Virus record (IMG/VR): IMGVR_UViG_3300035212_003113
Location: 62,001-126,000 of that record
Direction: 5' to 3' (one strand)
DNA: 64,000 nt
Made by a program: the position numbers and the translations under genes. The stretch's first letter is position 1. The number at the start of each line of letters is the position of its first letter. Below are positions 3 through 56,084 of the stretch, piece by piece. The notes beneath the pieces were generated by a model, which saw nothing but the letters and a program-made list of their open reading frames with translations, was not told the DNA's origin and did not search any database.

Positions 3-227
3 ATCCTACTAAGTCCTCATGGTAAACATCCGAACTGCGAAATAGTTTTTACACTGCGAAAAGATGGATCTTTAATCTATAAAGACTACTACGAAAACGG
101 CATCTTCCACCGCGAAGACGGCCCAGCAGTAACTGTATATAGCGAGTGCGGTAATACTGCAGAAGAGCTTTTCTACTGTCAGGGAAAGCTGTTAAACAGA
201 AAGTGCTACAAGGATGAAGCTGAATAA
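3..227 (+). CDS. 5'-truncated HRxDGPA-motif phage protein
   Basis: Open frame from window start: ...YYENGIFHREDGPAVTVY...; TAA at 225-227 overlaps the next gene. Confidence 0.7.
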   Translation: MLLSPHGKHPNCEIVFTLRKDGSLIYKDYYENGIFHREDGPAVTVYSECGNTAEELFYCQGKLLNRKCYKDEAE

Positions 228-528
228 AGCGGCGGTGATTGCCGGACTACCTGACGGCTGGGAGCTGCAATACGATGGCGATATCATTTTGTATCAGATG
301 GGAGACGCAGCAGTACAGCATGAATTCAGCGGCAACAACTTAATCAGTATTTCACATTTCCTAGAAGGAGAGCTGCACCGCGACCCTGTCAACGGGCCAG
401 CTTATATTTGGTGGGTCGGCGATCAGGTTTATGAGAAATACTTTTTTGCTGGACTGCCTGCTGCCAGTCCCGCTGGCCACTACGGCGTGGTAAAAAAAGA
501 TGACGGCAGCGTGCTACTTACTTACTAG
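214..528 (+). CDS. HRxDGPA-motif hypothetical protein (MKL start)
   Basis: LHRDPVNGPAY motif. Confidence 0.7.
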   Translation: MKLNKAAVIAGLPDGWELQYDGDIILYQMGDAAVQHEFSGNNLISISHFLEGELHRDPVNGPAYIWWVGDQVYEKYFFAGLPAASPAGHYGVVKKDDGSVLLTY

Positions 529-532
529 AGCT

Positions 533-565
533 GGCCGGACCTAAAGACCGGTCGGGCCGATCCTG
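533..565 (+). promoter_or_regulatory. CCTAAA-N13-GATCC hairpin element, copy 1
   Basis: CCTAAA 540-545, GATCC 559-563; arms GGCCGG/CCGGTC; followed by GGAGCGAAG-ATG. Confidence 0.75.
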
Positions 566-576
566 ACGGAGCGAAG

Positions 577-960
577 ATGCAAAAACTAGACGAGGTACTA
601 GACGCCTTGCGGGCAGAACGTGCCGATAACGACCGGCTTATCCGGGCGCTAGACAAGTCAGAGGCATATGCTGCCGACTGTGCACAGCAGTGTGGAGACC
701 TGGCAGAAGGCGTAGCGAAGGCACTAGGTATGGGCTATGTCCTTGTTGTGCCAGATGATGTCCGTATAATTGAGCGGGCAACCACTACTGTGACACAACT
801 GCGTAACGCTACCGCCCTACTCGCAGAGGCGCTAGGTCAACTAGAGACTCACTCCGGCTTTAGTGCTTATAGCAGAATTCATTCTATGGCCGGAGAAAAG
901 CTGGCCGCCCGTATACATTGCTTTCTCGGAGAACTAGATGCGAGCAGAATCAAGGACTGA
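577..960 (+). CDS. hypothetical helical protein
   Basis: ORF with GGAG SD directly after the element. Confidence 0.7.
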   Translation: MQKLDEVLDALRAERADNDRLIRALDKSEAYAADCAQQCGDLAEGVAKALGMGYVLVVPDDVRIIERATTTVTQLRNATALLAEALGQLETHSGFSAYSRIHSMAGEKLAARIHCFLGELDASRIKD

Positions 961-1456
961 GCGCTATCGACGCAAGCTGCCTACGGCAGACCTATTGCCC
1001 GTGGAGGTAACTAGCGTCAACTTCCGCTGCGAAGAGAATATCGCTTACCTCATCCGTGCAGCAGCTTGCTTTGGCGCATCAGCCGTAAATGTAATCGGCT
1101 CCTGTCCTCCTCCCGGATTACTGCGTGAACTTTCGGGCACTACTTCGGACTTAGTTACGATTCGTAATTTTTCCTCGCCTGGAGACTTCCTGCAATTCTG
1201 CCGCGACAACAATAGGAGAATTGTCTGCGCGGAGCTGGCAAATGATGCCACAAGCTTGCATGACTATGCCTTTGACCATAGCGCAATCACCTGTATTGTT
1301 ATTGGTCACGAGCAGCTGGGCGTTCCAGTTGACATCCTGCATCACGGCGACGTAGTGCAGATCCCAATGCCAGGCTTTGGCTACTCGCTTAATGCTGCTC
1401 AGTCCGGTAATATCATGCTTTACGAATATGCGAAACAGTTCGCGCGGAGTTGCTAA
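938..1456 (+). CDS. SpoU/TrmH-family RNA methyltransferase
   Basis: ENIAYLIRAAACFG, VIGHEQLG, IPMPGFGYSLNAAQSG SPOUT motifs. Confidence 0.9.
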   Translation: MRAESRTERYRRKLPTADLLPVEVTSVNFRCEENIAYLIRAAACFGASAVNVIGSCPPPGLLRELSGTTSDLVTIRNFSSPGDFLQFCRDNNRRIVCAELANDATSLHDYAFDHSAITCIVIGHEQLGVPVDILHHGDVVQIPMPGFGYSLNAAQSGNIMLYEYAKQFARSC

Positions 1457-7482: not shown

Positions 7483-7881
7483 TTGAAGATTTCCAGCTTT
7501 CCTGAAAACCGCGTTACGCTGATTAATGCAGCGCTGTCTGGCTTTTTTACTGGCAATTCCTTGCCACTAATTCAACTTGAAAAAGCACGGGCTAAGCGGC
7601 TTATCCATTGGTTTAATAAATACCTTGTTAATCCCCACTGGGATAATGCTAAGCTAATGGCGGCGGAGGATCATAACCTGAGGATTCGATGGACTCTCTG
7701 GGACTATAATAGCTCATGCAAAACATCAGTTCACAAAGATATCGACACCAGAGAAACGCTAGGGAATCTGGCCAACCATCGACTACCGCCTGCCGTTGTG
7801 CAAGAGGTTTCTGCTAGCAAATCGGTTGCAATCTATGTGTACCATTATTGGGATTATAAATCTTTTTTCTTTAAAGTATAG
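7483..7881 (+). CDS. hypothetical protein (MKI start)
   Basis: TTG start after GGAG SD. Confidence 0.6.
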   Translation: MKISSFPENRVTLINAALSGFFTGNSLPLIQLEKARAKRLIHWFNKYLVNPHWDNAKLMAAEDHNLRIRWTLWDYNSSCKTSVHKDIDTRETLGNLANHRLPPAVVQEVSASKSVAIYVYHYWDYKSFFFKV

Positions 7882-7883: not shown

Positions 7884-8138
7884 ATGAAACTTAGCTCTAT
7901 TGCGATATCGGAAGCAATAAGCGAAGGCGACTATGATGCGGTGTATGACCTCATCTGTAGCCACTTTCATCTACAGGTGCTGGATAGAATCTATATAGAT
8001 GTTTATCCGGCAATCGGTTATTCAAAATACGCTATCCTTTGGCAAGACGGCTACACATATTCCTGGAATTCTGCTGTCGGGTGGGAAGAGCCACGAGCCA
8101 CAGATACTCCAGATACAGAATTGCTGATAAGAACATGA
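7884..8138 (+). CDS. MKL-family small protein (group A)
   Basis: MKLSSIAISEAISEGDYDAV; resembles 9489, 12438, 14474, 14758. Confidence 0.65.
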   Translation: MKLSSIAISEAISEGDYDAVYDLICSHFHLQVLDRIYIDVYPAIGYSKYAILWQDGYTYSWNSAVGWEEPRATDTPDTELLIRT

Positions 8139-12170: not shown

Positions 12171-12441
12171 CACTCCTCGAATTGCGCTGCGATTTGTTAC
12201 CGACCTGCTGCGCTCGTTTTATTCTACTTTTTATTCGGCTGGTAGCGGTTGGTTCATTGTAACCGTAACAGTAACCGTATGCTTGTATTTTGCTTCATCG
12301 AGTGGCAGTCCTGCTCTCGCCAACGCATTCAACTTGATTGTACTGCCGTGGCAGATCGCCTTTCTTATCTATGTTGTTGGCGCGGCACGAAAATTCTTTT
12401 CTGAGCGTTGGGCCGCTGCCCGCCGCAGCATTAGTAAGTGA
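12160..12441 (+). CDS. membrane protein
   Basis: Two hydrophobic segments. Confidence 0.6.
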   Translation: MSNNTPRIALRFVTDLLRSFYSTFYSAGSGWFIVTVTVTVCLYFASSSGSPALANAFNLIVLPWQIAFLIYVVGAARKFFSERWAAARRSISK

Positions 12442-12701
12442 AGCTGTTTAAGTTGGCGGCACAAGGGGCCTTTGTTGCTGGCAACTATGATCTAGCAGTC
12501 CGCATCATATGCGATCAAATGGGGGCACGCCATCCAGAGGCTGCCCCTATGTTTTTTATAACATACGAAGCCCCGCGCATGTTAAAGATAGTGCTGGGCA
12601 AAGAGCGCCGCACATATTGCTTTGAAGCACGCAGCCTTGTATTAGAATGGTGGGAATGGGACGGCACTATCCATTCTTTCGATAGGATCTTAATAGAATG
12701 A
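12438..12701 (+). CDS. MKL-family small protein (group A)
   Basis: MKLFKLAAQGAFVAGNYDLAV. Confidence 0.65.
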   Translation: MKLFKLAAQGAFVAGNYDLAVRIICDQMGARHPEAAPMFFITYEAPRMLKIVLGKERRTYCFEARSLVLEWWEWDGTIHSFDRILIE

Positions 12702-13126
12702 ATAGCGGATTTATTCTGGCGCTGACAGCTGCCTTGCTTTGGGGCGCAAGCTATACTCTTTCTGCCAAAGTTCTAAAAGGCGTAGAGCCGCTAGTGATGC
12801 TGCCTATAGCCAGTGTATTCCGGTTGCTATGGTTCACTTGCTTATTTGCACTATTTGCCAGAGACAAAATATCCCAGCTCAGCATGAAGTCAGTGGGACT
12901 AATTGGAATTGAAACATTTTTTTCGACAGCCGCTACGTTAGCTATTATGACAGCAATAACCCGTATTGGTGCCAGTCGCGCTTCGCTACTGGAAATCAGT
13001 TATCCAATTTTTGTGGTAGTACTGTCTGCGCTATTCATGCGAACGCCTATTACTGCAAATATGCTGATCGGTGGATTGATAGTGCTACTGGGCGTCGCAA
13101 TTATCTCTGGAGACTCACATGTCTGA
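12698..13126 (+). CDS. EamA/DMT-family membrane protein
   Basis: LALTAALLWGASY, GASRASLL..SYPIFVVVLS; about 5 TM segments. Confidence 0.85.
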   Translation: MNSGFILALTAALLWGASYTLSAKVLKGVEPLVMLPIASVFRLLWFTCLFALFARDKISQLSMKSVGLIGIETFFSTAATLAIMTAITRIGASRASLLEISYPIFVVVLSALFMRTPITANMLIGGLIVLLGVAIISGDSHV

Positions 13127-13421
13127 TTCAGGTACAAAAGACGCAACAGCAAGCAAGAATCGCGTAGAAGAGCCGCGCCGGTTTAAAGTTATTATTCTCA
13201 ATGATGATTTCACGCCATACGAGTTCGTAGTGGATATCTTGAAATCAGTTTTCCGAAAAGACCAGCAAGCGGCAAACGCAATCACTCTGCAAATTCATGC
13301 TAGTGGTTTTGGCCTTGCCGGAGTCTATACGCGAGACATTGCAGAGACGAAAGCTGGCGTCGCCGTTGATCGTGCACAGGCCGCTGGACACCCGCTCATT
13401 GTTCAGGCTGTTCCAGAATAA
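13119..13421 (+). CDS. clpS: ATP-dependent Clp protease adaptor ClpS
   Basis: FKVIILNDDFTPYEFVVDIL, IHASG, YTRDIAETK, GHPL. Confidence 0.95.
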   Translation: MSDSGTKDATASKNRVEEPRRFKVIILNDDFTPYEFVVDILKSVFRKDQQAANAITLQIHASGFGLAGVYTRDIAETKAGVAVDRAQAAGHPLIVQAVPE

Positions 13422-13434: not shown

Positions 13435-13812
13435 GTGAAACTAGGTCTAGCCAAACTTATCCTAGGGCTGGATGCCTACTCTATAGATGGAGTAGGCTGG
13501 GGAATTATTTTTGCAACGGCCGAGGACAGGCGCGTCAAGATATCTTTCCGCGAACATAACTACTCTATGCGCTCCATAGAATATTATAATGGTTCAGGCG
13601 ACGCAGACCGTGATGCTGCGAACGGCCCAGCCAAAATTTACTATGATGCAGACGGCTCTGTTCTAGGCGAAGAATATTGGCGCAGCTCCTACCTGCACAG
13701 GCCGGCTTGCGATGGCCCTGCCGTAACACTATATGGCACAGACTATAGGCGAGAAGAATATTGGGAGAACGGCTTGCAGCTGTTTTCAGAACCCCTTTAC
13801 TCTAGAATATGA
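13435..13812 (+). CDS. HRxDGPA-motif protein (MKL start)
   Basis: RDAANGPAK, LHRPACDGPAV, EEYWENG; GTG start. Confidence 0.7.
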   Translation: MKLGLAKLILGLDAYSIDGVGWGIIFATAEDRRVKISFREHNYSMRSIEYYNGSGDADRDAANGPAKIYYDADGSVLGEEYWRSSYLHRPACDGPAVTLYGTDYRREEYWENGLQLFSEPLYSRI

Positions 13813-14473: not shown

Positions 14474-14755
14474 ATGAAACTTGAGATCGTAGATGCAATG
14501 CTAGCATTGCAGGCGCAAGACGCCCCTGCCTTAGCAAGTCGCATATTTTATCATTTCGGAGTACTGCCACTCGAACTAAAAACAGTAATCAGAGGCATAG
14601 TTACGCCTAGAGCGGGTGTGATTGTCGTACCAGACAAGTTCATGTCGTATGCCTTTGGCGAGCTAGTCGGACCAAACAAAAAGCACTGGGGTTTTAGTTG
14701 CTGGTCTTTTAGTGTGACAGACCCGCATGACTATCCATATCTTCTATTTACTTAG
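14474..14755 (+). CDS. MKL-family small protein (group A)
   Basis: MKLEIVDAMLALQAQDAPAL. Confidence 0.65.
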   Translation: MKLEIVDAMLALQAQDAPALASRIFYHFGVLPLELKTVIRGIVTPRAGVIVVPDKFMSYAFGELVGPNKKHWGFSCWSFSVTDPHDYPYLLFT

Positions 14756-16103: not shown

Positions 16104-16535
16104 GTGAAACTCCAGGTAGCTGAGCTTTTATTTTGTGAAGACTTTTACCAAGTTTTGCTTTGGTTTGCAAAGTTTTACGAAATGAAGGTTCCGTCACCGG
16201 AGCATTTCTCAGAGATAATGTCTAATCCCGATATAATGACGATAGGCATATGGCTAGATTCTTGTGGTACGCTTGCTACTTTGAAATGGGATCGCCATAA
16301 TTACATAGCAGACTTTTTTCAGAAATGCGTAGAGCTGCCGCCTAGTGCCGAAAGTGCGGGTGAAATATTCGCCGCACTTGCAAAATATAAATACGGAATG
16401 CCACCTAGAATCACTCTTTGGACGACTACAACTATAACTACAAGCCTAGAGCTGAGCCTTGATCTCGCGCGCTTCCTAGAAGATCGCGGATTTTGCAGAG
16501 ACTTCTCAAACAACTGGGACTACTTTGGATCATGA
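16104..16535 (+). CDS. MKL-family protein, tandem paralog of 16532
   Basis: IMSNPDI, GIWLD, PRITLW, NWDY shared. Confidence 0.7.
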   Translation: MKLQVAELLFCEDFYQVLLWFAKFYEMKVPSPEHFSEIMSNPDIMTIGIWLDSCGTLATLKWDRHNYIADFFQKCVELPPSAESAGEIFAALAKYKYGMPPRITLWTTTTITTSLELSLDLARFLEDRGFCRDFSNNWDYFGS

Positions 16536-16954
16536 AGCTAAATGACCTAAGCGCGGCAATCGAGCTAAAGAATTGCCAAACAGGCCTAGACCTATGCGTT
16601 AAATGTGCAAATCTTTTTGGAATGCCGATGCCATCAAAAGAATGCATCAGCTGGATAATGTCTAATCCAGACATCCAAGAAGCAGGAATATGGATAGACT
16701 TGCCAGGAGACTCGTTTTGCCTTTATTTCAAGTATGAGCATTCAGCAGAGCCTCTTAACAAAACTCTGTCATTTTATACAAAGTTTGCTGGCCTTTGTCG
16801 CAAGGGTCGACCACACATTACCTTGTGGTCTAGTAAAGATGCAAACACTACATATCTAGATGATCGTGATTTTACAAGAGTAGATCGCACAAACTGGGAT
16901 TATGACGGCAGGGCAATTAATCATGCTCAAGCCTGTCATGGGCATAACAAATAA
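16532..16954 (+). CDS. MKL-family protein, tandem paralog of 16104
   Basis: IMSNPDI, GIWID, PHITLW, NWDY shared. Confidence 0.7.
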   Translation: MKLNDLSAAIELKNCQTGLDLCVKCANLFGMPMPSKECISWIMSNPDIQEAGIWIDLPGDSFCLYFKYEHSAEPLNKTLSFYTKFAGLCRKGRPHITLWSSKDANTTYLDDRDFTRVDRTNWDYDGRAINHAQACHGHNK

Positions 16955-17731: not shown

Positions 17732-18147
17732 TGAAGCTGGAAGACGTATCGCTCAGGCTTGCAAACTCAGTAGAAGCAATAGACAGAATTCTTGTAGCTT
17801 CTCGAGAGCTTTATGGCAAACTACTGCCCGTAGACAGGCAGCGAGTAGCGAAGTACATAGTAGGTTGCAACCATCATAATGTCAAAATAGAGCGAGTACA
17901 ATTCCACGAGTCCTTCTACTGTAATCGCATATGGCCTGATCCAACCAAGTATATGCCAGATAGAGAATATATCTGGTCTATTCAGATAGTACTGATGACA
18001 AAAAAGAAAAAAGTACACTTGGTTTCGCTGCACTATCCTTATGACGCAGCAACAAATTCTTGCTTACCTGTGCAAGATTTGCAGCTCCTGAGACAACAGC
18101 GTGCTGCTGACTGGGTGCGTAAATGCGCCTCGCCAAGGCAGCCATGA
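17731..18147 (+). CDS. MKL-start hypothetical protein
   Basis: TAATG coupling. Confidence 0.6.
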   Translation: MKLEDVSLRLANSVEAIDRILVASRELYGKLLPVDRQRVAKYIVGCNHHNVKIERVQFHESFYCNRIWPDPTKYMPDREYIWSIQIVLMTKKKKVHLVSLHYPYDAATNSCLPVQDLQLLRQQRAADWVRKCASPRQP

Positions 18148-18455
18148 AGTTAACTTGGGCTACAGATGCCTGGTACGCATGGCAAGATGGCAATAAAGCG
18201 CTGCTGTCTTCTTTAGTTTTGCAAAATATTGGCAAGCCGCTTTCTGCTAGAATCCCTTCAGTAAAATGGGGTTACGAGTCAAGCGCAAATCTTGACCATA
18301 TCTTTACAATGATAATGCTATCAAATGCTTGGTCTGTGTTTCGTGGCGAAACGCTAATACGTAGCATAGCCTGGGAATTTGACAGAAACGCAGGTCCGCC
18401 TGGCGTAGTACCATCGGTTTTACCATATCGACAGTTTATCATAATTAAGAATTAA
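18144..18455 (+). CDS. MKL-start hypothetical protein
   Basis: MKLTWATDAWYAWQDGNKAL. Confidence 0.6.
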   Translation: MKLTWATDAWYAWQDGNKALLSSLVLQNIGKPLSARIPSVKWGYESSANLDHIFTMIMLSNAWSVFRGETLIRSIAWEFDRNAGPPGVVPSVLPYRQFIIIKN

Positions 18456-20425: not shown

Positions 20426-21268
20426 TTGGCAAAGAATAGCTTAGGCAAAATACTATGGGATATGGCTAAGCGCGGCGATGCCTTTTTGCTTAACACAAAA
20501 AAGGCTACGCAGGTTCTTGTGCCATATGGCAAGTATGCCGGTGCGTGGACATATGCAAAGTCTACCAGAACTTGTCGCTGGGCATTCACATTCCCAGCCG
20601 AATTGGCAGATAGCAAGGCGAAGGCATATGGCCCCAGTGGAAAGTCTAAGACTTTCCCTCTGCCGGATACAATTTATAGTTGGATGGGCGGCGGACATCC
20701 AGGAAAAATTCATGCTGCAAATAGGTCGCAACTAGCCTGGGCGGTTACAAAGTGGGCCGCATTCAATGCAAGCCGTTTGCGACCTATTTCGGAACTGCTC
20801 GCTTTAGTTGATAGTTCTATTGCCTTCTCTAGCTGGCAGGCCAAAGTGGGCTTGCGCTGGGCGCTGGCTTTCTCTATGCCAGATGCGCTGCGTGCAATGG
20901 CGGCAGACAGGGCGGATTTCATCCGCAAATTGGATTTCATTGGAAAGTCAGCAACCTTTATGCGGCACCTATCTCCATCCCGCCGCCAGCGGTTTGTTGC
21001 CAGATGCTTGCGTGGTGGACCAGAGTTTGCGGTACGCAAGGTGTTCCGCCGAGCAGATGCAGATTTAATTTCAAGTGTTTTTGAAGGCAATGCCTGGAAG
21101 TGCGAGCCTGGCTTGGCTCATGTATTTTTAGCGTCTGCCGAGAAAAACCAGACTTTGAATAAATTTGATTCGTTGTTGCATATGGCTCAAAGTGGATCTT
21201 CTAGAAAGATAAGCAGATTAAAAATCCACTTTGTAGATGAAGCTAATCACGGCGGCCCTAATACTTGA
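20426..21268 (+). CDS. hypothetical protein
   Basis: Long ORF; start uncertain. Confidence 0.55.
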   Translation: MAKNSLGKILWDMAKRGDAFLLNTKKATQVLVPYGKYAGAWTYAKSTRTCRWAFTFPAELADSKAKAYGPSGKSKTFPLPDTIYSWMGGGHPGKIHAANRSQLAWAVTKWAAFNASRLRPISELLALVDSSIAFSSWQAKVGLRWALAFSMPDALRAMAADRADFIRKLDFIGKSATFMRHLSPSRRQRFVARCLRGGPEFAVRKVFRRADADLISSVFEGNAWKCEPGLAHVFLASAEKNQTLNKFDSLLHMAQSGSSRKISRLKIHFVDEANHGGPNT

Positions 21269-35548: not shown

Positions 35549-35561
35549 CAGGAGCTTGCCC

Positions 35562-40953: not shown

Positions 40954-41280
40954 ATGAAGCTGTGGCTGGCAGAGCTAATCGAAAGCATAACGCAGAGTTG
41001 TAACCGCAAGCCGACAAGGCTCAATATTTCACTGGACCCGAAGCATGTTCGCGAAGCTATTGTATGGCTAAATGATGATGGCAGTCCTTTTGCCAAATAT
41101 TACTGCGCACTGCGCAAACTAAAGACATACTCAAGCGACGCGACTCATGAAACGCTGTTTTATGATTCTGGTCAAATAGCACAAATAACTCAAACCGCCC
41201 CCGGCACGATGACTACCGAGTGTTTTGATCGTGATGGGAATCCTGTACACTTTGCAGATTTTAATGAACTGAGGACTTGA
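40954..41280 (+). CDS. MKL-start hypothetical protein
   Basis: MKLWLAELIE. Confidence 0.6.
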   Translation: MKLWLAELIESITQSCNRKPTRLNISLDPKHVREAIVWLNDDGSPFAKYYCALRKLKTYSSDATHETLFYDSGQIAQITQTAPGTMTTECFDRDGNPVHFADFNELRT

Positions 41281-44229: not shown

Positions 44230-44721
44230 TTGCAAAGAGTACCACTTTTGATGAGACTATCTGCTTTCTTTTCTCATGCCAAAAATCCTAAGTTTTGGGA
44301 AGAAGCAGAGAGAGCGCACCTGCTTATCTCTAGGCTAAATAATGGGATTTGCTCTAATTCGCTTACGCACCAATTTCTTAAAAAGGCAGCAACCGATATA
44401 GAAGATAGAGTTGCATTCAACGCTTCTCCCGTATGCTGCTATCTTTATGGTGCGTGGTCAGCTCTATCTGAGCAAACAAAGAATCACACTGAGTCTGGTT
44501 ATGAACCAGACGATAGGTATCTGCTGTCACTTGAGAGCGCCAATGATCATATCTTCTGGCGGGTAATGCCATATTTAAATTCAACTGACTTCAACAAAAC
44601 GCTTGACCTGTTTCCTGTTATCTATAACAATGTCAGCGCTACATTTGCTTCAGGCAATGCCTGTCACATAGACATGGATGATCTAATTGTTAAAAAGTTT
44701 AGCGAAATGCCGGGTATGTAA
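44230..44721 (+). CDS. hypothetical protein
   Basis: TTG after GGAG SD (alternative ATG 44251, MRL). Confidence 0.6.
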   Translation: MQRVPLLMRLSAFFSHAKNPKFWEEAERAHLLISRLNNGICSNSLTHQFLKKAATDIEDRVAFNASPVCCYLYGAWSALSEQTKNHTESGYEPDDRYLLSLESANDHIFWRVMPYLNSTDFNKTLDLFPVIYNNVSATFASGNACHIDMDDLIVKKFSEMPGM

Positions 44722-45050
44722 TGAAGCTGCATGAAATGCATTTAATCCACTCTCTTATGGAGACACACGAGCTGTCTAACCATATTAGCTCTGAAAAACT
44801 AAATGGGCAGCGAGTGCATGTTATTACCGGACCCGGACGCATGATTATGCTAACAAAGCATCCACACCATTTTCATATATCTATGAACTATGATTCACGT
44901 CCTGTTAATGTAGAGCTGGATCTTAATCTTAATCTAGTGTCGCTAGATACTGGCAAATGGTCTCTTTCTGATGAAGACCTGATTCTTCGCAAAGATTTTG
45001 AGGAAAAAGTTAAGAGCTGGCTGCCTGCCGGACTAGGTTTTGGAAAATAA
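44721..45050 (+). CDS. MKL-start hypothetical protein
   Basis: TAATG coupling. Confidence 0.6.
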   Translation: MKLHEMHLIHSLMETHELSNHISSEKLNGQRVHVITGPGRMIMLTKHPHHFHISMNYDSRPVNVELDLNLNLVSLDTGKWSLSDEDLILRKDFEEKVKSWLPAGLGFGK

Positions 45051-47386: not shown

Positions 47387-48313
47387 ATGCTAGGAGTATG
47401 CTGCCAGTGGTTGAATGTCGTTCCTACAAAAACTGGTGAAAAATATGTTAACGCCCTAGGTGAACGCGCGCTTCAACTAGGGCGTTACTCTTCTGGCGCA
47501 TATACGCCGGAACACATAGCTGATGTATGGCTCGGTAATGTAAAAGGTTTGGCCAACATTATACCTACGGTACGCAGCGCCGGCGTAGGTATGTTTAGAG
47601 TGGGCAGCACGCTGCTGCCGCTCTTTGATAAGATCGCAGAGAGCCCGCTTAAAGGCCTGGTCGCAGATGCGGAGTCAGAACTGCGCAAGGTAGGCGCCCT
47701 CACTAACGGTATGAGGCTGACCACTCACCCCGGTCAATTCGTAGTAATTAGCTCGGATTCTGATACGGTCGTAGCTAACTCTGTTCGTGAGCTAGAGTAT
47801 CACGCATTTATCATGGACTCTCTAGGGTGCGCCGCAACGCCGCGGTTTGCAATAAATATTCATGGTGGCAAGCGAGATCGCGGAGATCGCTTGGTTGCTT
47901 CAATTAAGTCTCTGCCTAATTCAGTCCGATCCCGCCTTACGCTAGAGAATGACGAGAATTGCTGGTCTGTCGCTAACCTGCTGCCGATTTCTGAGCAAAC
48001 CGGCGTTCCGATTGTCTTCGACTCTCATCATCATCCATTTAATGATGGCGGTCTAACCGGCGAGGCAGCAATGCTTGCTGCCGCAAGTACGTGGCCAAGC
48101 GACATAAGACCGCTACAACACCTTAGTAATACAGAGCCCGGCTTTGAAGGCGGCTCATTTACAGAGCGCCGACAGCATAGCTGGGCAATTCATTATGTAC
48201 CGGATTATCAGCGAGACTTCTATCTAGCCGGTAAATCGGACATAGAGATGGAGTGCAAAGGCAAGAATCTAGGCTTTATTCCGTATGTAGATGCCCTCGG
48301 CATCTATTTATGA
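47387..48313 (+). CDS. uvsE: UV DNA damage endonuclease
   Basis: FRVGS.LLP, RLTTHPGQF, NIHGG, RLTLENDE, VFDSHHH, MECKGK. Confidence 0.93.
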   Translation: MLGVCCQWLNVVPTKTGEKYVNALGERALQLGRYSSGAYTPEHIADVWLGNVKGLANIIPTVRSAGVGMFRVGSTLLPLFDKIAESPLKGLVADAESELRKVGALTNGMRLTTHPGQFVVISSDSDTVVANSVRELEYHAFIMDSLGCAATPRFAINIHGGKRDRGDRLVASIKSLPNSVRSRLTLENDENCWSVANLLPISEQTGVPIVFDSHHHPFNDGGLTGEAAMLAAASTWPSDIRPLQHLSNTEPGFEGGSFTERRQHSWAIHYVPDYQRDFYLAGKSDIEMECKGKNLGFIPYVDALGIYL

Positions 48314-48708
48314 AATTAAGCGATTTTGTATTTAGGAATAAACACTTCTTCATCGACATGTTTGTCGATCCTTCCAATACAAAATCGCTTAAAGCGGTAG
48401 TAGATGACCTCAATGTATACAAATGGGGTATAGCTGAGCCAGGAGCTAGCGGCAGGATAATCCTGTCTTGCTCCAGTAATGGCGAGATACAGAAGTCTGC
48501 TACTCTAGCAGTACTACCCGAACAGCTAACGGTATTTTTCGCCTTCCTGCCAGAAGGCGATTACTGCCGGTCTGACTTTGATGGCTTAGATTATATAATA
48601 GACGTCTGGAGCGAAGGCTCTACCTTCTTTCGCTGCGGAGGTCTTGAGGTGGTAGTTTACCAGCAAGATTCGTTAGTCGAATTGATCAAGGCAGCCAACG
48701 AAGGTTGA
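48310..48708 (+). CDS. MKL-start hypothetical protein
   Basis: ATGA overlap. Confidence 0.6.
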   Translation: MKLSDFVFRNKHFFIDMFVDPSNTKSLKAVVDDLNVYKWGIAEPGASGRIILSCSSNGEIQKSATLAVLPEQLTVFFAFLPEGDYCRSDFDGLDYIIDVWSEGSTFFRCGGLEVVVYQQDSLVELIKAANEG

Positions 48709-49179
48709 ATCCTCGTAGCGCCGAATCTTCTTAATGATATTGCGTATGCGACCCGGTCGCTTAAGTACATTAGCCGCCAAGTCAAAGCGATTTAATATGT
48801 ATTCGTATATGTCTTTGACGCTACCGTTCGGCAACACAAAGCCTTCGTCGCAGAAATCGGCCATGATAATCTGCTTCTTCCCTTTGTTCGGCCAGCTGCA
48901 TATCTCGCAGAACAACAGCTTGCTGGCGCTATTTTGAAAGCAGCGTATTATTCGGCGATTGTTTACCCAGATCTCGGCTACCATGATGCGAGGCCCTTCT
49001 AGCTGCACTTCGCCATCTAACCAGTAGTTATAGCCAACGAACTTGCTGATAAAAGATTGGCCAGTGCCCAACTTAGCGACATTTAGTCTTATACCGAGGC
49101 TCTGCAATTTCACAACTAACTCGATTTCGATGCCTGGATTTCTGTGCTCTTTGCCACTTGCTGTAATGCTTCTGCACAA
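48673..49179 (-). CDS. hypothetical protein
   Basis: Only long ORF filling the gap; start uncertain. Confidence 0.45.
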   Translation of the reverse strand: MCRSITASGKEHRNPGIEIELVVKLQSLGIRLNVAKLGTGQSFISKFVGYNYWLDGEVQLEGPRIMVAEIWVNNRRIIRCFQNSASKLLFCEICSWPNKGKKQIIMADFCDEGFVLPNGSVKDIYEYILNRFDLAANVLKRPGRIRNIIKKIRRYEDSTFVGCLDQFD

Positions 49180-51042: not shown

Positions 51043-52490
51043 TGATATCAAAAAAACAAAAAACGCCGCCTCAGGCATCTGTTGTAGTAGGACAATCTGC
51101 TGTAGAGTTCGTACGCCGAGCAATGAAGCACTACGGCGACGAGGTCATTCAGAACCGCGCGCTACCCCGCCTAGAGGATGGTCTAAAGCCGATTCAGAGA
51201 CTGCTGCTATGGAGCTGCGTAGACCTTAGCACTACTAGGTTTATCAAGTCTGCCAAGATCACCGGGCATTGCATTGCATCGTATTCGCCACACGGCGAGA
51301 TTGCTGCATACGGATCGCTGGTTGGTATGGTAAACGAGCGGCACCCGCTAGTCGAAGGCCAAGGCAACTTTGGCGGCGCTACCACCGAAGCAGCCAGCGC
51401 TCGATACACAGAGAGCCGAATCCACCCACTAGCTCGTCGCCTGATAACAGATTTACCTGACATGGCAGTAGTTCCTTATGAAAAGAACTACGATGACACT
51501 AAGGATCAGCCTCGCTATCTGCCAGGCCTCCTGCCAATGCTACTGCTAAATTCTAGCACCGGCATTGCAATGGCAATCACCAGCAAATTCCCTGGGTTCT
51601 CGATCCTAGAGGTTGCTGCCGCTGTACTAGAATATCTGGCGAATGGCAATGAGAAAAAGGCTGCCAGGCATATTAAGGCTCCTGATGGCAACATCTGCAA
51701 CCTGCTGTCTACAAAAGAGGAGGTTGCCGAACTACTTGCAACAGGATGCGGCCAGCTGCTGTACGAATGCAAGTACCACCTGGATAAAAAAGGCGACCGC
51801 AAGCTCATCGTAATCACCGGCTATGCTCCAGAGTTTAGCGTTTCTGGTTTTCTTGCCAAGTGCGGAGAGCTACAGGACTCAGGAATAATCGAAGCAACGC
51901 GCAATGAGACTTCAGGTGCCAATGGCGACAGAATCGTTATAGAATATCGCTCTGACGAAGCGTATGAGAAAGTACGCAAGCTACTTCGCAAAAAAGTTAG
52001 CTACCGAATGAATTGCCTGTATGAGGACGGCGGTTCGCTGATTCCAAAGCAAGTAGGTGTTGCCGACGTAATCAGGGATTGGGTAGCGGTTCGGCGCAAG
52101 ACGGTTGCAGCTACGCTAGCGGCGTCGCTTAAGCGGCAAGACGAAGAGATCAAGCGAGAAGCTGCCAAGCTGAATGCTTGCCTAAATCTAGAGGCAGTAT
52201 TTGCTGCACTACGGGCTGAAGGCGATTTTAGGCAAAATTTGCAGAAGCTTGCCGGGCTAGACGACTTCGAGGCAGGCATAGTTTGCGAGATGCGCGTAGA
52301 GGCGCTAAAGAAAGCAAGTGCAGAAGCACTACGCAATAAAATAACAGATATGCAGACTGCGCGCGCAACAACGGTCACAGATCTCAGCAATGTCGATGCC
52401 TATTTAATCCGTCAGATAAAGGCATTCATGAGCTGGTTGAAAGCGGAATACCCCGACCTGTTGCTGCGAAAAACGGTCTGGGAAGTATGA
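51042..52490 (+). CDS. type IIA DNA topoisomerase subunit A (no CTD)
   Basis: RALP..EDGLKPIQR, KSAK, PHG, GQGNFG, ARYTE catalytic Tyr. Confidence 0.93.
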   Translation: MISKKQKTPPQASVVVGQSAVEFVRRAMKHYGDEVIQNRALPRLEDGLKPIQRLLLWSCVDLSTTRFIKSAKITGHCIASYSPHGEIAAYGSLVGMVNERHPLVEGQGNFGGATTEAASARYTESRIHPLARRLITDLPDMAVVPYEKNYDDTKDQPRYLPGLLPMLLLNSSTGIAMAITSKFPGFSILEVAAAVLEYLANGNEKKAARHIKAPDGNICNLLSTKEEVAELLATGCGQLLYECKYHLDKKGDRKLIVITGYAPEFSVSGFLAKCGELQDSGIIEATRNETSGANGDRIVIEYRSDEAYEKVRKLLRKKVSYRMNCLYEDGGSLIPKQVGVADVIRDWVAVRRKTVAATLAASLKRQDEEIKREAAKLNACLNLEAVFAALRAEGDFRQNLQKLAGLDDFEAGIVCEMRVEALKKASAEALRNKITDMQTARATTVTDLSNVDAYLIRQIKAFMSWLKAEYPDLLLRKTVWEV

Positions 52491-52873
52491 TGAAGCTGGT
52501 GCAGTGGGTAATCATGTATGATCACGACTCGCTACTGAGTCTCGACTCACGATTACCCATTCACCCGCAACACAGCAGAGTTCTAGATATCATGACAGTT
52601 TGCGACTGGATAATAGATCTGGACATGAAGTCAGGCTGCGGAGCATGGATATGTCTTCGCGGCCTTTTTTGTGGCAAGGGCTTTTCACGCGATGCGGACG
52701 ATATAGACTCAATACTCCATAGAATTGGTAATTCTGTAAAACCATTTCTAGAGATTTCTCCAAGTGATTCGCTGGATGCTACCTGTGTTCATCAGCTATC
52801 CAGCCTGGGTTTTGTAACTGAAAATAACTGTGGCCTACAGGTCATGCGGTGGTACAAAGATGAAGATTGTTGA
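52490..52873 (+). CDS. MKL-family protein, tandem paralog of 52860
   Basis: MKLVQWVIMYDHD...LPIHP. Confidence 0.6.
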   Translation: MKLVQWVIMYDHDSLLSLDSRLPIHPQHSRVLDIMTVCDWIIDLDMKSGCGAWICLRGLFCGKGFSRDADDIDSILHRIGNSVKPFLEISPSDSLDATCVHQLSSLGFVTENNCGLQVMRWYKDEDC

Positions 52874-53186
52874 GTGGTTTCTGAGCAAAGACATCGACAC
52901 TGTTGTCAATAGCCTTCAGGACTTCCCCGTTCATCCAAAGATCAATGACGTTGTCGAGTACTCTAGGAAGAACAATATCGGCATCCAGGTCCGCACAAAA
53001 GATGATCTGATGGTCCTGGGATTGTCTCCTTCGCTTGTTCGACCTGCCTGGCTGGCAGAGAGTATGTTTAATTTTTCGTTTGCCGGCTGCCGTATTATTG
53101 CCACGGTTTATTCCGAAGAACACCAGTCAAAGTTCCGGGCATGGGGATTTAAAGAAAAAGGCCGAACCTTTACCTATACCGGCTGA
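52860..53186 (+). CDS. MKI-family protein, tandem paralog of 52490
   Basis: MKIVEWFLSKDID...FPVHP. Confidence 0.6.
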   Translation: MKIVEWFLSKDIDTVVNSLQDFPVHPKINDVVEYSRKNNIGIQVRTKDDLMVLGLSPSLVRPAWLAESMFNFSFAGCRIIATVYSEEHQSKFRAWGFKEKGRTFTYTG

Positions 53187-53460: not shown

Positions 53461-53465
53461 CTGCT

Positions 53466-53500: not shown

Positions 53501-53540
53501 TTGGGCACAAGGCGAACCCACAGCAGAAAGGATTTTGAAG

Positions 53541-53930
53541 ATGAACCACGGAGAGAAGACAGCTAGCGAGGCAGTTTCTGGAGTCATGGCCGAATTGGCC
53601 GTAAAGGACGGCCAGCTGCGAGCAGCTTTCGTTATTCGCGACAAGCAGAACCCGTACAATGAGCCAACCACTCTTCGCGTAATGACGCTCGAAGATGTAA
53701 AGGCTTTCGTGGATGCCGTTCCAGACCAAGTTCACTATCTGGCTCTGTCAAAAGACGACAACCAGAAGCTTGTCAAGCTGAGCCTAAGCTCGCGTTCACA
53801 CAAGTACAACGTCCACTGTGGTCAAACTAATCACATGGGATATCTATTCGACAAGACTCTTTTCGTTCGCCTAGAAGAAGAAATCGGCAACGAATTGATG
53901 CCGGATCTGCTCGTTTTCTTGAGCAACTGA
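53541..53930 (+). CDS. hypothetical protein
   Basis: AAAGGA SD. Confidence 0.65.
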   Translation: MNHGEKTASEAVSGVMAELAVKDGQLRAAFVIRDKQNPYNEPTTLRVMTLEDVKAFVDAVPDQVHYLALSKDDNQKLVKLSLSSRSHKYNVHCGQTNHMGYLFDKTLFVRLEEEIGNELMPDLLVFLSN

Positions 53931-53945
53931 AGTAAGGGGGTTATT

Positions 53946-54260
53946 ATGATCAGTAGCGCTGAACAGCAATTTGTTATAAAACTGCAAGACGAAGAAGAAC
54001 TAGAGCGCCGGTATTTGCTAGATGTTCTAGCTCACAAGCGCCTTGAGAATGTCCAGAAATCCGGCGCGGTACTCGCTCCAGATCGCATTCTTGAGGCAGT
54101 AACGGTACTTGGAGAAGACTGCCGCCTGGAGTTCCGTGATGGTATGTGGAACATTGACCTTGGCGGAGCAGATACCAAGAAAAAGGTTAAGATCAGAGCT
54201 GAACGGCAGCATATTGCTCTCGCCAAAGCAATGATCATCTATGTCCGCAAATACCTTTGA
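53946..54260 (+). CDS. hypothetical protein
   Basis: 104-aa ORF. Confidence 0.6.
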   Translation: MISSAEQQFVIKLQDEEELERRYLLDVLAHKRLENVQKSGAVLAPDRILEAVTVLGEDCRLEFRDGMWNIDLGGADTKKKVKIRAERQHIALAKAMIIYVRKYL

Positions 54261-54729
54261 TTTCCTAGACCATTGCGGTCCGCAGCTAGTTCCTAGCTCA
54301 GCTTGGAACTCGAATCTGCGCGCAATACTGAGCGCAGCCGAATGGCGAGATCTTAGAGAGCGGGTATTTGCAAAACACGGCAAACAATGCGCTTACTGTG
54401 GATCCAGGCCGCGCTCACTAGACTGCCATGAAATCTGGTCGTACTGCATAGAAGATGGTCAAGCAGCGGGCAGACAGAGCCTTGTTAAAATTCAACCTCT
54501 GTGTAAAGCCTGTCACATGGTGTGTCATATTGGATTCTGGTCGATGCAAGGCAAGTATGAACAAGTGCTTGCGCATATGATGCGCGTCAGAGGGATAAGT
54601 CGTGCAGCAGCTGTCGACGAAGTAGATGCAGCTTTTGCTACTTTTGAATTACTGAGCCGCTTTGAATGGATACTCGACATAGGGGCGGTAAGCTTCTATG
54701 CAGATGAAACTCAAAAAATTCTTCCCTAG
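54241..54729 (+). CDS. HNH endonuclease
   Basis: NLRAIL...W..LR, CAYCG, CHEIW.Y, LCKACHMVCH. Confidence 0.85.
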   Translation: MSANTFDFLDHCGPQLVPSSAWNSNLRAILSAAEWRDLRERVFAKHGKQCAYCGSRPRSLDCHEIWSYCIEDGQAAGRQSLVKIQPLCKACHMVCHIGFWSMQGKYEQVLAHMMRVRGISRAAAVDEVDAAFATFELLSRFEWILDIGAVSFYADETQKILP

Positions 54730-55159
54730 GCACGATCTAGATTTCCTGCTGGATTCTATTTTCGGCTGCCCCGAACCCAGACGCTTGATAGACATTGCCC
54801 GCAGCGCCAGTAGCCGCCTTGATTTTCCGCTATTTCAAGCGAGCATAGGCCAGGGCGATACCCCGTTTATTGTCGGCGACAACCCGCTTACAAGCGTGCA
54901 CATGATCACATGGTTCAGGCAAAGCGCCGCCAAAGAGCGAATAGTCACAGGATATCCTACCGCACACCCATTGTCAAGCTATTATCTGGGCTTATGGTAT
55001 GCCTACGGATGGAGGCGTCCAGATAGCGAGATGCAGCGCATGCTAGATGACTTAAGTAGTATTGGACAAATTCACACAAGAAACAGCTGGGCCTGGATAA
55101 TAATAGACCCGGGCACAACCTTTGATCTAGGAGTTTTTTATGCAGTTTTCGGAGAATAA
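54704..55159 (+). CDS. MKL-start hypothetical protein
   Basis: MKLKKFFPRH. Confidence 0.55.
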   Translation: MKLKKFFPRHDLDFLLDSIFGCPEPRRLIDIARSASSRLDFPLFQASIGQGDTPFIVGDNPLTSVHMITWFRQSAAKERIVTGYPTAHPLSSYYLGLWYAYGWRRPDSEMQRMLDDLSSIGQIHTRNSWAWIIIDPGTTFDLGVFYAVFGE

Positions 55160-55628
55160 GCCACAGAACAACGGCTGCTATGCCGTCAAGTACGACGGAA
55201 TTGTTTGGGCCTCGTTTAGGAAAGAGGCGTTGATGCAGTATTTTCACGACGTAGAGAATATTGAGCAAGCCTCCAAGTTCTTTGAAGCACAGCCGGTTTT
55301 TGACGAGAGCAATCCTTTGGCTGATCCACTAGACCGACGGGATCTGCGCGCAGGCGAGAAACACCTAAAATATCTCGTATGCGACCGAACGGCACTAGAG
55401 TTCCAGCTAACATGCGCCGCCCGATCAGACGCACTAGGAATCGTAGCTTCTGAGATCTGCAATATTCTTGTTAATCGAGAAGAGGCGGCAGAGCTACTAG
55501 GTGTCCTGCGAGCGGATACGTTAGCAGTCGCAGCAGAAGACGACTGGTATCAAAAGAATGGCGAGCGGTCACATGTCATGTTTGAAGAGACGTGCAAGGC
55601 CGCCGGCAAAGAACTAGGCAAGTGTTGA
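55140..55628 (+). CDS. hypothetical protein
   Basis: AGGAG SD. Confidence 0.6.
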   Translation: MQFSENKPQNNGCYAVKYDGIVWASFRKEALMQYFHDVENIEQASKFFEAQPVFDESNPLADPLDRRDLRAGEKHLKYLVCDRTALEFQLTCAARSDALGIVASEICNILVNREEAAELLGVLRADTLAVAAEDDWYQKNGERSHVMFEETCKAAGKELGKC

Positions 55629-56084
55629 ATGAAGATTAAGTCATTCCTGTACAATCAAGAGACAGAGGCTACGATAGATCTCGCATATAAGAGCGCGTCA
55701 GAGGTCGCCAAGAAGCTTGGTGTCAAGCTAAAGCCGGAAAAAGATTTCCGTTTCAGAATGAACTATGCTATCGCGCGCGCACGCAAGAGTCGTTGGAGCG
55801 ACAAGCTAAACGAAATCAAGTCGATCCGACTTTCAGTTGGCGTTTCTTATCATTCGCCTTGGTCTTCTGCAAGTCGCGAGACGCTAGAATACAGCATCTG
55901 CCATGAATTGACCGATGCGGCTGTAACAGACATAGGACTTTGCTCGGAGCTTATCAATTACGCCAGCTCCATCAAGATTGTTATCACGGTTGATTATTAT
56001 CAAGCCTGGAGGCGTCAGGCCCGCAAAAAACAGCAGCAAACTACTGCCAACCTAAAAGGAACTCTCAGTGGATCAGGAGCGTAG
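55629..56084 (+). CDS. MKI-start hypothetical protein
   Basis: 151-aa ORF. Confidence 0.55.
   Translation: MKIKSFLYNQETEATIDLAYKSASEVAKKLGVKLKPEKDFRFRMNYAIARARKSRWSDKLNEIKSIRLSVGVSYHSPWSSASRETLEYSICHELTDAAVTDIGLCSELINYASSIKIVITVDYYQAWRRQARKKQQQTTANLKGTLSGSGA

What the first reader, a model, noticed from the sequence alone, without database searches (positions are those of the whole stretch)
214..56084. About 25 small proteins begin M-K-L (or M-K-I): a shared N-terminal tag
Seen: MKL/MKI starts at 214, 7483, 7884, 9489, 12438, 13435, 14474, 14758, 16104, 16532, 17731, 18144, 21237, 21800, 22339, 22832, 23966, 28542, 40954, 44721, 48310, 52490, 52860, 54704 and 55629. All are function-unknown proteins of about 85-165 aa, while the recognisable enzymes lack the tag. 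The codons vary (ATG/GTG/TTG; AAG/AAA; CTG/CTT/CTC/CTA/TTA), which points to protein-level selection. Known: Met-basic-hydrophobic N-termini are the ClpXP N-motif 2 degron (e.g. IscS MKLP). Inference: a common degradation, targeting or partner-docking tag on a diversified effector library, possibly linked to the phage's own ClpS/SspB adaptors. Caveat: some starts were chosen at the MKL.
Basis: partly seen in the sequence, partly recalled or inferred. Interest (0 to 1): 0.72.

Follow-up and report, generated by a model that had tools for sequence, protein, structure and literature searches.

The report
Shared Met-Lys-Leu start on small phage proteins
About one gene in five of this 372-kb lake-water phage, almost all of them small proteins of unknown function, starts with Met-Lys-Leu or Met-Lys-Ile; the pattern is real and kept at the protein level, gene-family expansion explains part of it, and its function is unknown.

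Summary
A start caller that ignores everything after the start codon finds 102 of 491 genes beginning M-K-L or M-K-I. That is 41% of 80-170 aa proteins and 2.8% of proteins of 170 aa or more. Two other jumbo phages give 2.5% with the same caller.

Paralogy explains part of it. Family A is an orphan family with at least 36 copies and a confident predicted fold with no match. Family B has 11 copies, an N-terminal helix and MORN-like repeats. After collapsing paralogs, 43 of 165 small-protein clusters still carry the start, against 4 of 148 large ones.

Lys2 is invariant and residue 3 is Leu or Ile in three families whose predicted architectures differ. These families share only their first 6-12 residues. 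Codon choice points to selection on the amino acids. MKL genes are poor in Shine-Dalgarno sites and closely abut the upstream gene.

In family A, MKL is the first turn of a structured helix, not a loose tail. Residues 4-5 are mostly acidic or polar, unlike the published ClpX N-motif-2 examples. A ClpS homologue exists; no SspB was found. The docking prediction gave no answer.

Best reading: an inherited, selected "start module" on a radiating set of accessory proteins. A true recognition tag is not excluded.

The parts
214..528 (+). MKL gene, family B (N-helix plus HRxDGPA / MORN-like repeats), 104 aa
   Evidence: the ESM Atlas model has pTM 0.82 with MORN_2-type structural neighbours.
7483..7881 (+). 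TTG-K-I gene, family c07, 132 aa
   Evidence: AF2 gives pLDDT 77 with an alpha2-beta2-alpha2-beta2 architecture. Of 23 database homologues, 22 start [MVL]K[LI] and one has MKL 16 residues in.
7884..8138 (+). MKL gene, family A, 84 aa
9489..9761 (+). MKL gene, family A, 90 aa; the modelled member
   Evidence: AF2 gives pLDDT 92.6 with helices 2-13 and 17-28 plus 5 strands. No fold match was found.
12438..12701 (+). GTG-K-L gene, family A, 87 aa; its GTGA overlaps the upstream stop
13119..13421 (+). ClpS-like adaptor gene (context; not an MKL gene)
   Evidence: PF02617 at 91 bits. It aligns to C. crescentus ClpS with E = 2e-19, and the gatekeeper Met position is Tyr.
13435..13812 (+). GTG-K-L gene, family B, 125 aa
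   Evidence: The paralogue alignment places VKL on the family's MKL. Longer in-frame starts exist.
14474..14755 (+). MKL gene, family A, 93 aa
14758..15042 (+). MKI gene, family A, 94 aa
   Evidence: database orthologues P0009 and P0011 start MKI.
16104..16535 (+). GTG-K-L candidate start, 143 aa; paralogue of the next gene
   Evidence: My caller chose 16182. The paralogue at 16532 starts MKL.
16532..16954 (+). MKL gene, 140 aa
17731..18147 (+). MKL gene, 138 aa; missed by my caller
   Evidence: Paralogue of the genome gene at 363957, with both N-termini MKL. There is no upstream alternative start.
18144..18455 (+). MKL candidate start, 103 aa; ambiguous
   Evidence: An ATG lies 7 codons upstream, at 18123.
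21237..21635 (+). MKL candidate start, 132 aa
   Evidence: First start after a stop. My caller chose 21345.
21800..22201 (+). MKL gene, 133 aa, singleton
22339..22680 (+). GTG-K-L candidate start, 113 aa; ambiguous (ATG one codon upstream)
22832..23143 (+). MKL gene, 103 aa; remote kin of the genome gene at 24502
   Evidence: hhalign 91% over the full length.
23966..24439 (+). MKL gene, 157 aa; paralogue of the genome gene at 37235 (MKI)
28542..29033 (+). MKL gene, 163 aa, singleton
40954..41280 (+). MKL gene, 108 aa, singleton
44721..45050 (+). MKL gene, 109 aa
   Evidence: The orthologue in L008 starts MKL.
48310..48708 (+). MKL gene, 132 aa
   Evidence: Orthologues in L008 and L009 start MKL.
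48673..49113 (-).
   Evidence: L008 MKL, L009 VKL.
52490..52873 (+). MKL gene, 127 aa (an ATG lies one codon upstream)
   Evidence: The language-model neighbours are GNAT-like, which is a lead only.
52860..53186 (+). MKI gene, 108 aa; weak kin of the preceding gene
   Evidence: hhalign 56% over columns 1-47; orthologues start MKI.
54704..55159 (+). MKL candidate start, 151 aa; ambiguous (MQMKL)
55629..56084 (+). MKI gene, 151 aa
   Evidence: a PHROG 8141 match covers residues 67-94.

Best explanation
M-K-L/I is the fixed head of a 'start module' carried by a lineage-specific radiation of small accessory proteins (80-170 aa).

The genes sit head to tail on one strand. Most abut or overlap the upstream stop and usually lack a Shine-Dalgarno site. 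Their products begin (f)Met-Lys-Leu/Ile, which runs straight into an N-terminal amphipathic helix.

Much of the excess arose by tandem duplication and fast divergence of a few cassettes: family A with at least 36-40 copies, family B with 11, and many pairs. The first residues are held by purifying selection on the amino acids while the rest of each protein diverges.

Inferred working:
- Lys2 keeps the initiator Met on the protein, because MetAP does not cut before Lys (established knowledge).
- Lys2 may also help expression of SD-less, coupled genes.
- Leu/Ile3 seeds the hydrophobic face of helix 1.

Shown: the pattern itself, the paralogy, amino-acid-level conservation across three predicted architectures, SD-poverty, and the helix in family A. 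Inferred: why Lys2 and Leu3 are needed.
For: Enrichment by independent start calls: 102/491 genes, 41% of 80-170 aa proteins against 2.8% of proteins of 170 aa or more. External jumbo phages with the same caller: 4/160.

Families:
- A has 36 called members, with M1 and K2 the only invariant columns at 17% mean column identity.
- K2 is invariant in 145 sequences.
- 313 database clusters match family A, and 126 of the 133 listed small ones start [MVL]K[LI].
- B has M1, K2 and L3 invariant.
- c07: 22 of 23 homologues start [MVL]K[LI].

Tandem runs of paralogues are visible in the gene list. The start is conserved in relatives: 33/33 family A and 22/25 other homologues.

Codons: the AAG share at codon 2 is 0.69-0.70 against 0.645 genome-wide; all six Leu codons and ATG/GTG/TTG starts are used.

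Helix: the family A model has a helix over residues 2-13, with mean pLDDT 91 for residues 1-10. Outside family A, hydrophobic residues are enriched at positions 6 and 8 and acidic residues at position 5. An anchored PSSM gives p = 1e-4.

SD-poverty: 37% against 77% of small genes with unambiguous starts have an SD of 4 nt or more (p = 4e-5). Among coupled genes it is 34% against 72%, with 21% at random positions. 63% of MKL genes against 42% of others abut the upstream gene.
Against: - Descent alone does not explain the pattern. After collapsing paralogues, 43/165 small-protein clusters still carry it, against 4/148 large ones.
- Families A, B and c07 share only columns 1-12 or 1-6 in profile-profile comparison and have different predicted architectures.
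- A quantitative expression effect seldom gives absolute invariance of Lys, with no Arg ever seen.
- K2 in MKL genes shows no AAA enrichment, whereas other K2 genes do (51% AAA). The usual A-rich +2-codon effect is therefore not what is seen.
- The highly expressed large genes do not use MKL.
- The SD contrast is weaker and not significant in two relatives (53% against 66%).
- No role for Leu at codon 3 in initiation is known to me.
Confidence: 0.42

Rival explanations
1. A true N-terminal recognition tag. (f)Met-Lys-Leu/Ile, with the first helical turn, would be read by one common factor that sets the lifetime, location or partner of more than 100 accessory proteins. Candidates are a host protease or adaptor such as ClpXP, or one of the phage's own N-terminus or nascent-chain proteins (ClpS-like, peptide deformylase, trigger-factor-like).
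For: - Lys2 is invariant and residue 3 is only Leu or Ile in three families with different predicted architectures and no similarity past residues 6-12.
- Selection acts at the amino-acid level.
- The pattern is restricted to one class of proteins.
- The phage encodes a ClpS homologue with a changed pocket residue, a peptide deformylase, a trigger-factor N-domain protein and a ClpP-family protease.
- IscS (MKLPI-5-A) is a listed ClpX N-motif-2 substrate, and family A has Ala at position 11 in 33 of 36 members (PMC9775585, Table 2).
Against: - In family A the N-terminus is part of a confident globular model, with the helix starting at residue 2. ClpX is described as recognising unstructured degrons (PMC12723719).
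- Residues 4-5 are mostly acidic or polar, unlike the five listed N-motif-2 examples.
- No SspB or L/F-transferase was found.
- ClpS reads N-terminal L/F/Y/W, not Met (established knowledge).
- The complex prediction gave no answer.
- No reader of fMet-Lys-Leu is known to me.
Confidence: 0.25
2. Pure common descent. All MKL proteins would descend from one ancestral small gene and have diverged beyond recognition. MKL would survive only because it is part of the ancestral helix, with no fold-independent function.
For: - Large families with extreme divergence: 14-17% mean column identity.
- Extra remote links appear with profile-profile comparison: c17-c26 at 91%, c05-c06 at 79%, c08-c09 at 71%.
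- N-terminal similarity of several clusters to family A extends to 8-15 residues.
- The length range is narrow.
- SD-poor, abutting gene architecture is shared.
Against: - Three different predicted architectures.
- The family B repeat module is widespread elsewhere with unrelated N-termini: none of the other 119 best database homologues starts MKL.
- An exposed residue 2 would be expected to tolerate Arg.
- Most clusters share nothing beyond MKL.
Confidence: 0.2
3. Artefact of start choice, or of a generic nucleotide bias at translation starts.
For: Six of the 25 listed starts are ambiguous or were not reproduced by my caller. A at the fourth CDS position and Lys at position 2 are common in bacteria generally (PMC5850271, PMC2034453).
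Against: - A caller blind to downstream sequence gives 102/491.
- Other pipelines' calls agree.
- 13 of the 25 listed starts have no alternative start.
- Genes of 170 aa or more in the same genome show 2.8%.
- Other jumbo phages show 2.5%.
Confidence: 0.02

Closest known systems
[quoted passage not shown] 2003, as tabulated in PMC9775585)
   Same: Met, then a basic residue, then Leu at the extreme N-terminus. Family A also has a small hydrophobic residue (Ala) at position 11.
   Different: Residues 4-5 are mostly Asp, Glu, Ser or Asn here. The N-terminus of family A is predicted to be helical and packed rather than unstructured. No degradation data exist, and the motif is so loose that a match carries little information.
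Capsid targeting sequences of T4 internal proteins: a shared N-terminal ~10 residues on polymorphic injected proteins (recalled from the literature, not tested here)
   Same: A conserved short N-terminal element heads a diversified set of small phage proteins. The T4 element also begins Met-Lys.
   Different: No conserved protease site follows the element here. The element is part of the fold in family A. More than 100 genes are involved rather than a handful, and there is no evidence of packaging.
Expanded paralogous families of small ORFan genes in jumbo and T4-like phage accessory regions
   Same: Tandem arrays, rapid divergence, no known function, and restriction to a lineage.
   Different: The same first three residues recur across families that are otherwise unrelated in sequence and predicted architecture, and they coincide with SD-poor starts.
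General bacterial preference for Lys (AAA) at codon 2 and A at CDS position 4 (PMC2034453, PMC5850271)
   Same: Lys at position 2; an ATGA start gives a +1-frame stop; MKL genes have weak SD sites.
   Different: There is no AAA preference in MKL genes. Leu/Ile at position 3 is coupled to Lys2 (57% against 6%). Frequencies of 30-47% in one size class are far above any general trend, and the large genes of the same genome lack the pattern.
MORN_2 / DUF6745-type HRxDGPA repeat proteins (family B only)
   Same: Family B carries 2-4 such repeats. Database homologues carry PF20530 or PF07661, and the structural neighbours are MORN_2 proteins.
   Different: The MKLDxWEAIxSLLxAGG head is specific to this phage lineage. 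None of the other 119 best homologues starts MKL.

Membership tests
ClpX N-motif-2 degron | N-terminal Met, then a basic residue, then a hydrophobic residue | tested here: met
   M-K-L/I in 102 genes.
ClpX N-motif-2 degron | Residues 4-5 small or hydrophobic as in the listed examples (VI, AV, TS, PI, TA), with a hydrophobic residue at about position 11 | tested here: inconclusive
   In family A, position 4 is acidic in 56% and position 5 is Ser or Asp. In other clusters position 5 is acidic in 33%. Position 11 is Ala in 33/36 family A members but not in other clusters. The examples come from PMC9775585, Table 2.
ClpX N-motif-2 degron | An unstructured, accessible terminus (PMC12723719) | tested here: not met
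   The family A AF2 model has a helix over residues 2-13, with mean pLDDT 91 for residues 1-10. For c07, residues 1-10 have pLDDT 68, so it is less clear.
ClpX N-motif-2 degron | ClpXP-dependent degradation conferred by the tag | not testable with these tools
   Needs a degradation assay.
ClpS / N-degron substrates | An exposed N-terminal Leu, Phe, Tyr or Trp | tested here: not met
   The encoded N-terminus is Met-Lys, and Lys at position 2 blocks Met excision (established knowledge). Leu would be exposed only after removal of two residues, for which there is no evidence.
ClpS / N-degron substrates | A ClpS adaptor is available | tested here: met
   The phage ClpS homologue scores 91 bits. The N, D, T and H pocket residues are aligned, and the gatekeeper Met is replaced by Tyr. 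The docking prediction gave no answer.
   No match at E <= 0.01 in the whole genome.
T4-type capsid targeting sequence | A short N-terminal leader followed by a conserved prohead-protease site and removed on maturation | tested here: not met
   No conserved hydrophobic-x-Glu site was found: positions 7-10 reach no 50% consensus. The leader is part of the predicted fold. Cleavage itself is not testable here.
Double-glycine leader / Peptidase C39 substrates | Gly-Gly at the leader end, with a C39 peptidase present | tested here: not met
   Family B has AGG at positions 15-17 but family A does not. The genome has no PF03412 match.
Sec or lipoprotein signal peptide | A basic n-region followed by a 10-15 residue hydrophobic core | tested here: not met
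   Positions 4, 5 and 7 are rich in acidic and polar residues.
Paralogous multigene family | Significant full-length similarity among several genes of one genome | tested here: met
   Family A has 36, family B 11, and there are about 12 smaller groups. This accounts for about half of the MKL genes, not all.
MORN_2 / DUF6745 repeat proteins (family B) | A Pfam match over threshold | tested here: inconclusive
   The protein at window 214-528 has no Pfam hit. Database homologues of the repeat carry PF20530 or PF07661, and the Atlas structural neighbours are MORN_2 proteins.

The most novel reading that the evidence does not exclude
Met-Lys-Leu/Ile is a lineage-specific N-terminal code marking more than 100 small accessory proteins, about a fifth of the proteome, for one dedicated reader. 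The phage could then control the synthesis, lifetime or delivery of a whole effector library through three residues.
Probability: 0.15. Interest if true: 0.85.

Novelty: new variant of a known kind. Interest (0 to 1): 0.55.

Why it matters
If the three residues are only an inherited family head, the result still has two uses. It defines a large orphan protein family: at least 36 copies per genome, more than 300 clusters at 50% identity in public data, and a confident predicted fold with no match. It also gives a simple marker for the accessory gene class of a group of freshwater huge phages.

If the residues are read by a common factor, or are needed for SD-independent translation, it would be a rare case of a proteome-wide N-terminal code in a virus. 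That is testable with a handful of reporter fusions.

The contrast between MKL genes and the other genes of the same genome in SD usage also offers a natural system for studying initiation without a Shine-Dalgarno site.

Tried and rejected
- Pfam and PHROGs on ten MKL proteins gave nothing useful.
- Fold searches of the family A model in PDB, AlphaFold DB clusters, BFVD and the ESM Atlas, and of the c07 model in PDB and the Atlas, gave no match with TM above 0.5.
- Large-protein hits of the family A profile are PKD_6 repeats that share only a YxW..G hairpin motif. I treated them as spurious.
- A family A profile without MKL (residues 4-32) finds no other MKL family.
- No conserved upstream nucleotide motif was found, and local RNA folding energy does not differ from that of other small genes. 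A promoter, cassette or structure explanation is therefore rejected.
- A strand-biased DNA word (ATGAAGCT) as a DNA-level signal is rejected. Most copies sit exactly on start codons, and synonymous or alternative codons are used freely.
- The search for related loci with the family A alignment failed because no stretch was conserved enough. With the topoisomerase it found only two close relatives.
- megablast and tblastn against cultured phages found no relative of the region or of family A.
- The ClpS-family A complex prediction gave no answer and is not used as evidence.
- No RNA sequencing run was listed.
- The double-glycine leader and C39 peptidase idea is rejected for this genome.
- The 'left arm means early genes' idea was dropped, because the 127-bp terminal repeat looks like an assembly overlap of a circular contig.

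Full report
**Source.** The window is bases 62,001-126,000 of a single 371,675-bp virus record. The record has 51% G+C, and 456 of my 491 called genes lie on one strand. It is held by lake-water and river metagenome runs. IMG/VR classes it as having direct terminal repeats. The repeat is exactly 127 bp, which I read as an assembler overlap of a circular assembly. The coordinate origin is therefore arbitrary. The window carries topoisomerase II subunits, two RNA ligases, a MoxR-type ATPase, a trigger-factor N-domain protein and other accessory enzymes.

- All 25 positions have a start codon followed by Lys and Leu/Ile, opening an ORF of 84-163 aa. Thirteen have no alternative start upstream.
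It uses nothing downstream of the start.
- The caller gave 82 MKL and 16 MKI among 491 genes.
- Four corrections were forced by paralogue alignment: three family A members have [TTG/GTG/ATG]-K-L seven codons upstream of my call, and 13435 is the fourth. The total then becomes 102.
- At least seven further MKL ORFs were not called at all.
Three fall in genes I missed or started later. Three have an alternative start 1, 2 or 7 codons upstream.

**Strength of the pattern.**
- Leu follows Lys2 in 57% of cases but follows any other second residue in 6%.
- The pattern is confined to small proteins: 62/132 at 80-120 aa, 31/97 at 120-170 aa, 5/181 at 170 aa or more, and 4/81 below 80 aa.
- In-frame internal [start]-K-[LI] occurs 23 times in 111,127 codons.
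- ATGAAGCT occurs 61 times on the coding strand, 44 of them at called starts, and 5 times on the other strand. About 6 per strand are expected from length alone.
- The same caller finds 4/160 in 50-kb stretches of phages RSL1 and PaBG, and 1/86 among their 80-170 aa proteins.
- Gene calls by other pipelines agree. Of the 133 small database relatives of family A that were listed, 126 start [MVL]K[LI]. In two distantly related contigs 13/17 and 22/48 called genes start MKL.

**How much is paralogy?** A large part, but not all.
- Family A has 36 called members, four uncalled ones and a 25-aa remnant. Its consensus is MKLxxYxxxxAxxxxDWxxAxxxLxxHFG...YxW....GF. Members are 16-35% identical to the first member. 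M1 and K2 are the only invariant columns, and L3, A11 and W60 are nearly invariant.
- A profile search of 1.84 billion representatives finds 313 family A clusters at E <= 1e-3. In a 145-sequence alignment K2 is the only invariant column, at 14% mean column identity.
- Family B has 11 members. It has the head MKLDxWEAIxSLLxAGG followed by 2-4 repeats of G.LHRDDGPAVIYPDGTQEWYRN.
- The family B repeat is very widespread (6,300 hits). Its best 120 homologues have unrelated N-termini, and none starts MKL apart from this genome's own protein. Its structural neighbours are MORN_2-type proteins.
- Smaller groups and a few remote links exist.
- After collapsing all detectable paralogues, 43 of 165 clusters of 80-170 aa proteins still contain an MKL/MKI member. 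The figure is 4 of 148 for clusters of 170 aa or more (Fisher p = 2e-9), and 1 of 86 for small genes of the two external phages (p = 4e-8).

**Is the constraint tied to one fold?** No.
- Family A models confidently (pLDDT 92.6) as two helices (2-13, 17-28) and five strands. It has no match in PDB, AlphaFold DB clusters, BFVD or the ESM Atlas.
- Family B is a helix plus a MORN-like sheet.
- Family c07 (window 7483) models as alpha2-beta2-alpha2-beta2 at pLDDT 77. Of its 23 database homologues, 22 start [MVL]K[LI] and the last has MKL 16 residues into a longer call.
- Profile-profile comparison aligns A with B over columns 1-12 only (probability 12%), and A with c07 over columns 1-6 only (6%).
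- A family A profile without MKL finds no other family.
- Beyond MKL there is a weaker shared tendency outside family A, consistent with an amphipathic helix starting at residue 2. Position 5 is acidic in 33% against 13%. Position 6 is hydrophobic in 75% against 46%, with aromatics at 33% against 10%. Position 8 is hydrophobic in 71% against 45%. The anchored PSSM gives p = 1e-4.

**Nucleotide or amino-acid selection?**
- Start codons are ATG 65, GTG 11 and TTG 6. Lys is AAG in 70%, against 64.5% genome-wide.
- All six Leu codons occur, with CTA raised to 39% against 20%.
- Other genes with Lys2 show the usual AAA enrichment (51%, p = 0.04). MKL/MKI genes do not (31%, p = 0.41).
- No upstream motif is shared, and local folding energy equals that of other small genes.

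**A new association.**
- MKL genes are poor in Shine-Dalgarno sites. Among small genes with unambiguous starts, 37% have an SD of 4 nt or more, against 77% of the others (p = 4e-5). Without family A the figure is 35%.
- Among genes abutting the upstream gene the figures are 34% against 72%, and random positions give 21%.
- MKL genes abut or overlap the upstream gene more often (63% against 42%).
- In two relatives the SD difference has the same sign but is not significant.

**The degron reading.**
- The published N-motif-2 examples are DadA MRVVI, FabB MKRAV, IscR MRLTS, IscS MKLPI and OmpA MKKTA, each with a hydrophobic residue five positions further on (PMC9775585, Table 2).
- ClpX degrons are described as unstructured (PMC12723719).
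- Here residues 4-5 are mainly D/E/S/N, and the family A terminus is helical and packed. Family A does have Ala at position 11.
- The fit is loose and carries little information.
- The phage does encode a ClpS homologue at window 13119-13421. It has the N-degron pocket residues, but Tyr replaces the gatekeeper Met.
- The phage also encodes a peptide deformylase, a ClpP-family protease and a trigger-factor-like protein. No SspB or L/F-transferase was found.
- ClpS reads N-terminal L/F/Y/W for ClpA. With Lys at position 2 the initiator Met is retained (established knowledge). MKL proteins are therefore not ClpS substrates as encoded.
- The ClpS-family A complex prediction scored 0.18 and is stated by the tool to be no evidence either way.

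**Conclusion.**
- The pattern is real, protein-level and lineage-wide. About half of it comes from gene-family expansion.
- A fold-independent constraint still holds Lys2 and Leu/Ile3 in otherwise unrelated small proteins of an SD-poor, tightly coupled gene class.
- I favour an inherited 'start module': Met retention, SD-independent expression and a helix seed (0.42).
- The alternatives are a true recognition tag (0.25) and pure descent (0.20).
- An artefact is excluded for practical purposes (0.02).
- The function of the proteins themselves remains unknown.

Noticed in passing
window 15052-15747 and 38746-39519; genome 14625, 19503, 20280(-), 24783(-), 25286, 61508(-), 210605: A second shared N-terminal module. 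At least nine proteins of 91-467 aa carry IAxELDxAG....ADxxD at about residues 8-32, ahead of unrelated C-terminal parts. A relative in contig L011 (14811-15470) has a Peptidase_C39 domain. The own genome has no C39 match.
   Followed up: partly
window 13119-13421: A phage ClpS homologue that keeps the N-degron pocket residues but has Tyr where C. crescentus ClpS has the gatekeeper Met53 (LNDDFTPYEFVV). This suggests an altered N-terminal specificity.
   Followed up: partly
window 31346-32743, 34274-36857; genome 137962-138366 and 170941-171435: The phage carries a set of nascent-chain and proteostasis genes. They are a trigger-factor N-domain protein, a MoxR-type AAA ATPase next to a DUF2201 metallopeptidase-like protein, a peptide deformylase and a ClpP-family protease.
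   Followed up: partly
genome ends (1-127 and 371549-371675): The 'direct terminal repeat' is exactly 127 bp, the size of a common assembler k-mer. It is probably the overlap of a circular assembly rather than a physical terminal repeat.
   Followed up: partly
L001:959-2840 and 10829-11481; window 214-528 and 13435-13812: Family B proteins are built of 2-4 HRxDGPA...WYxNG repeats (DUF6745 / MORN_2-like). These repeats have thousands of homologues in public data with quite different N-termini.
   Followed up: yes
genome 30875 (L002:10875): A 25-codon remnant of a family A gene (MKLHHYKMLQVFRAR...) lies between intact copies, a sign of turnover in the array. Four intact family A-like ORFs (genome 8486, 9728, 10110, 50361) were missed by my caller.
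   Followed up: partly
genome 12482-35886: Five tRNA genes lie inside the MKL-rich region: Thr-TGT, Met-CAT, Ser with the unusual anticodon ACT, Leu-TAA and Gln-CTG. None reads the AAG or CTN codons of the MKL start.
   Followed up: no
window 41285-43417: A 710-aa protein with only a weak GHKL-type ATPase match (HATPase_c_3, 24 bits). It lies upstream of the topoisomerase II genes, and its identity is not resolved.
   Followed up: no
L002:4502-4786 and window 22832-23143: A small MKL family (MKLDLKTTITHGNPQQLQAVIQKEFGADLP) whose helix-2 end 'EFG' resembles the 'HFG' of family A (hhalign 39% over columns 1-35). It may be a remote branch of family A.
   Followed up: partly
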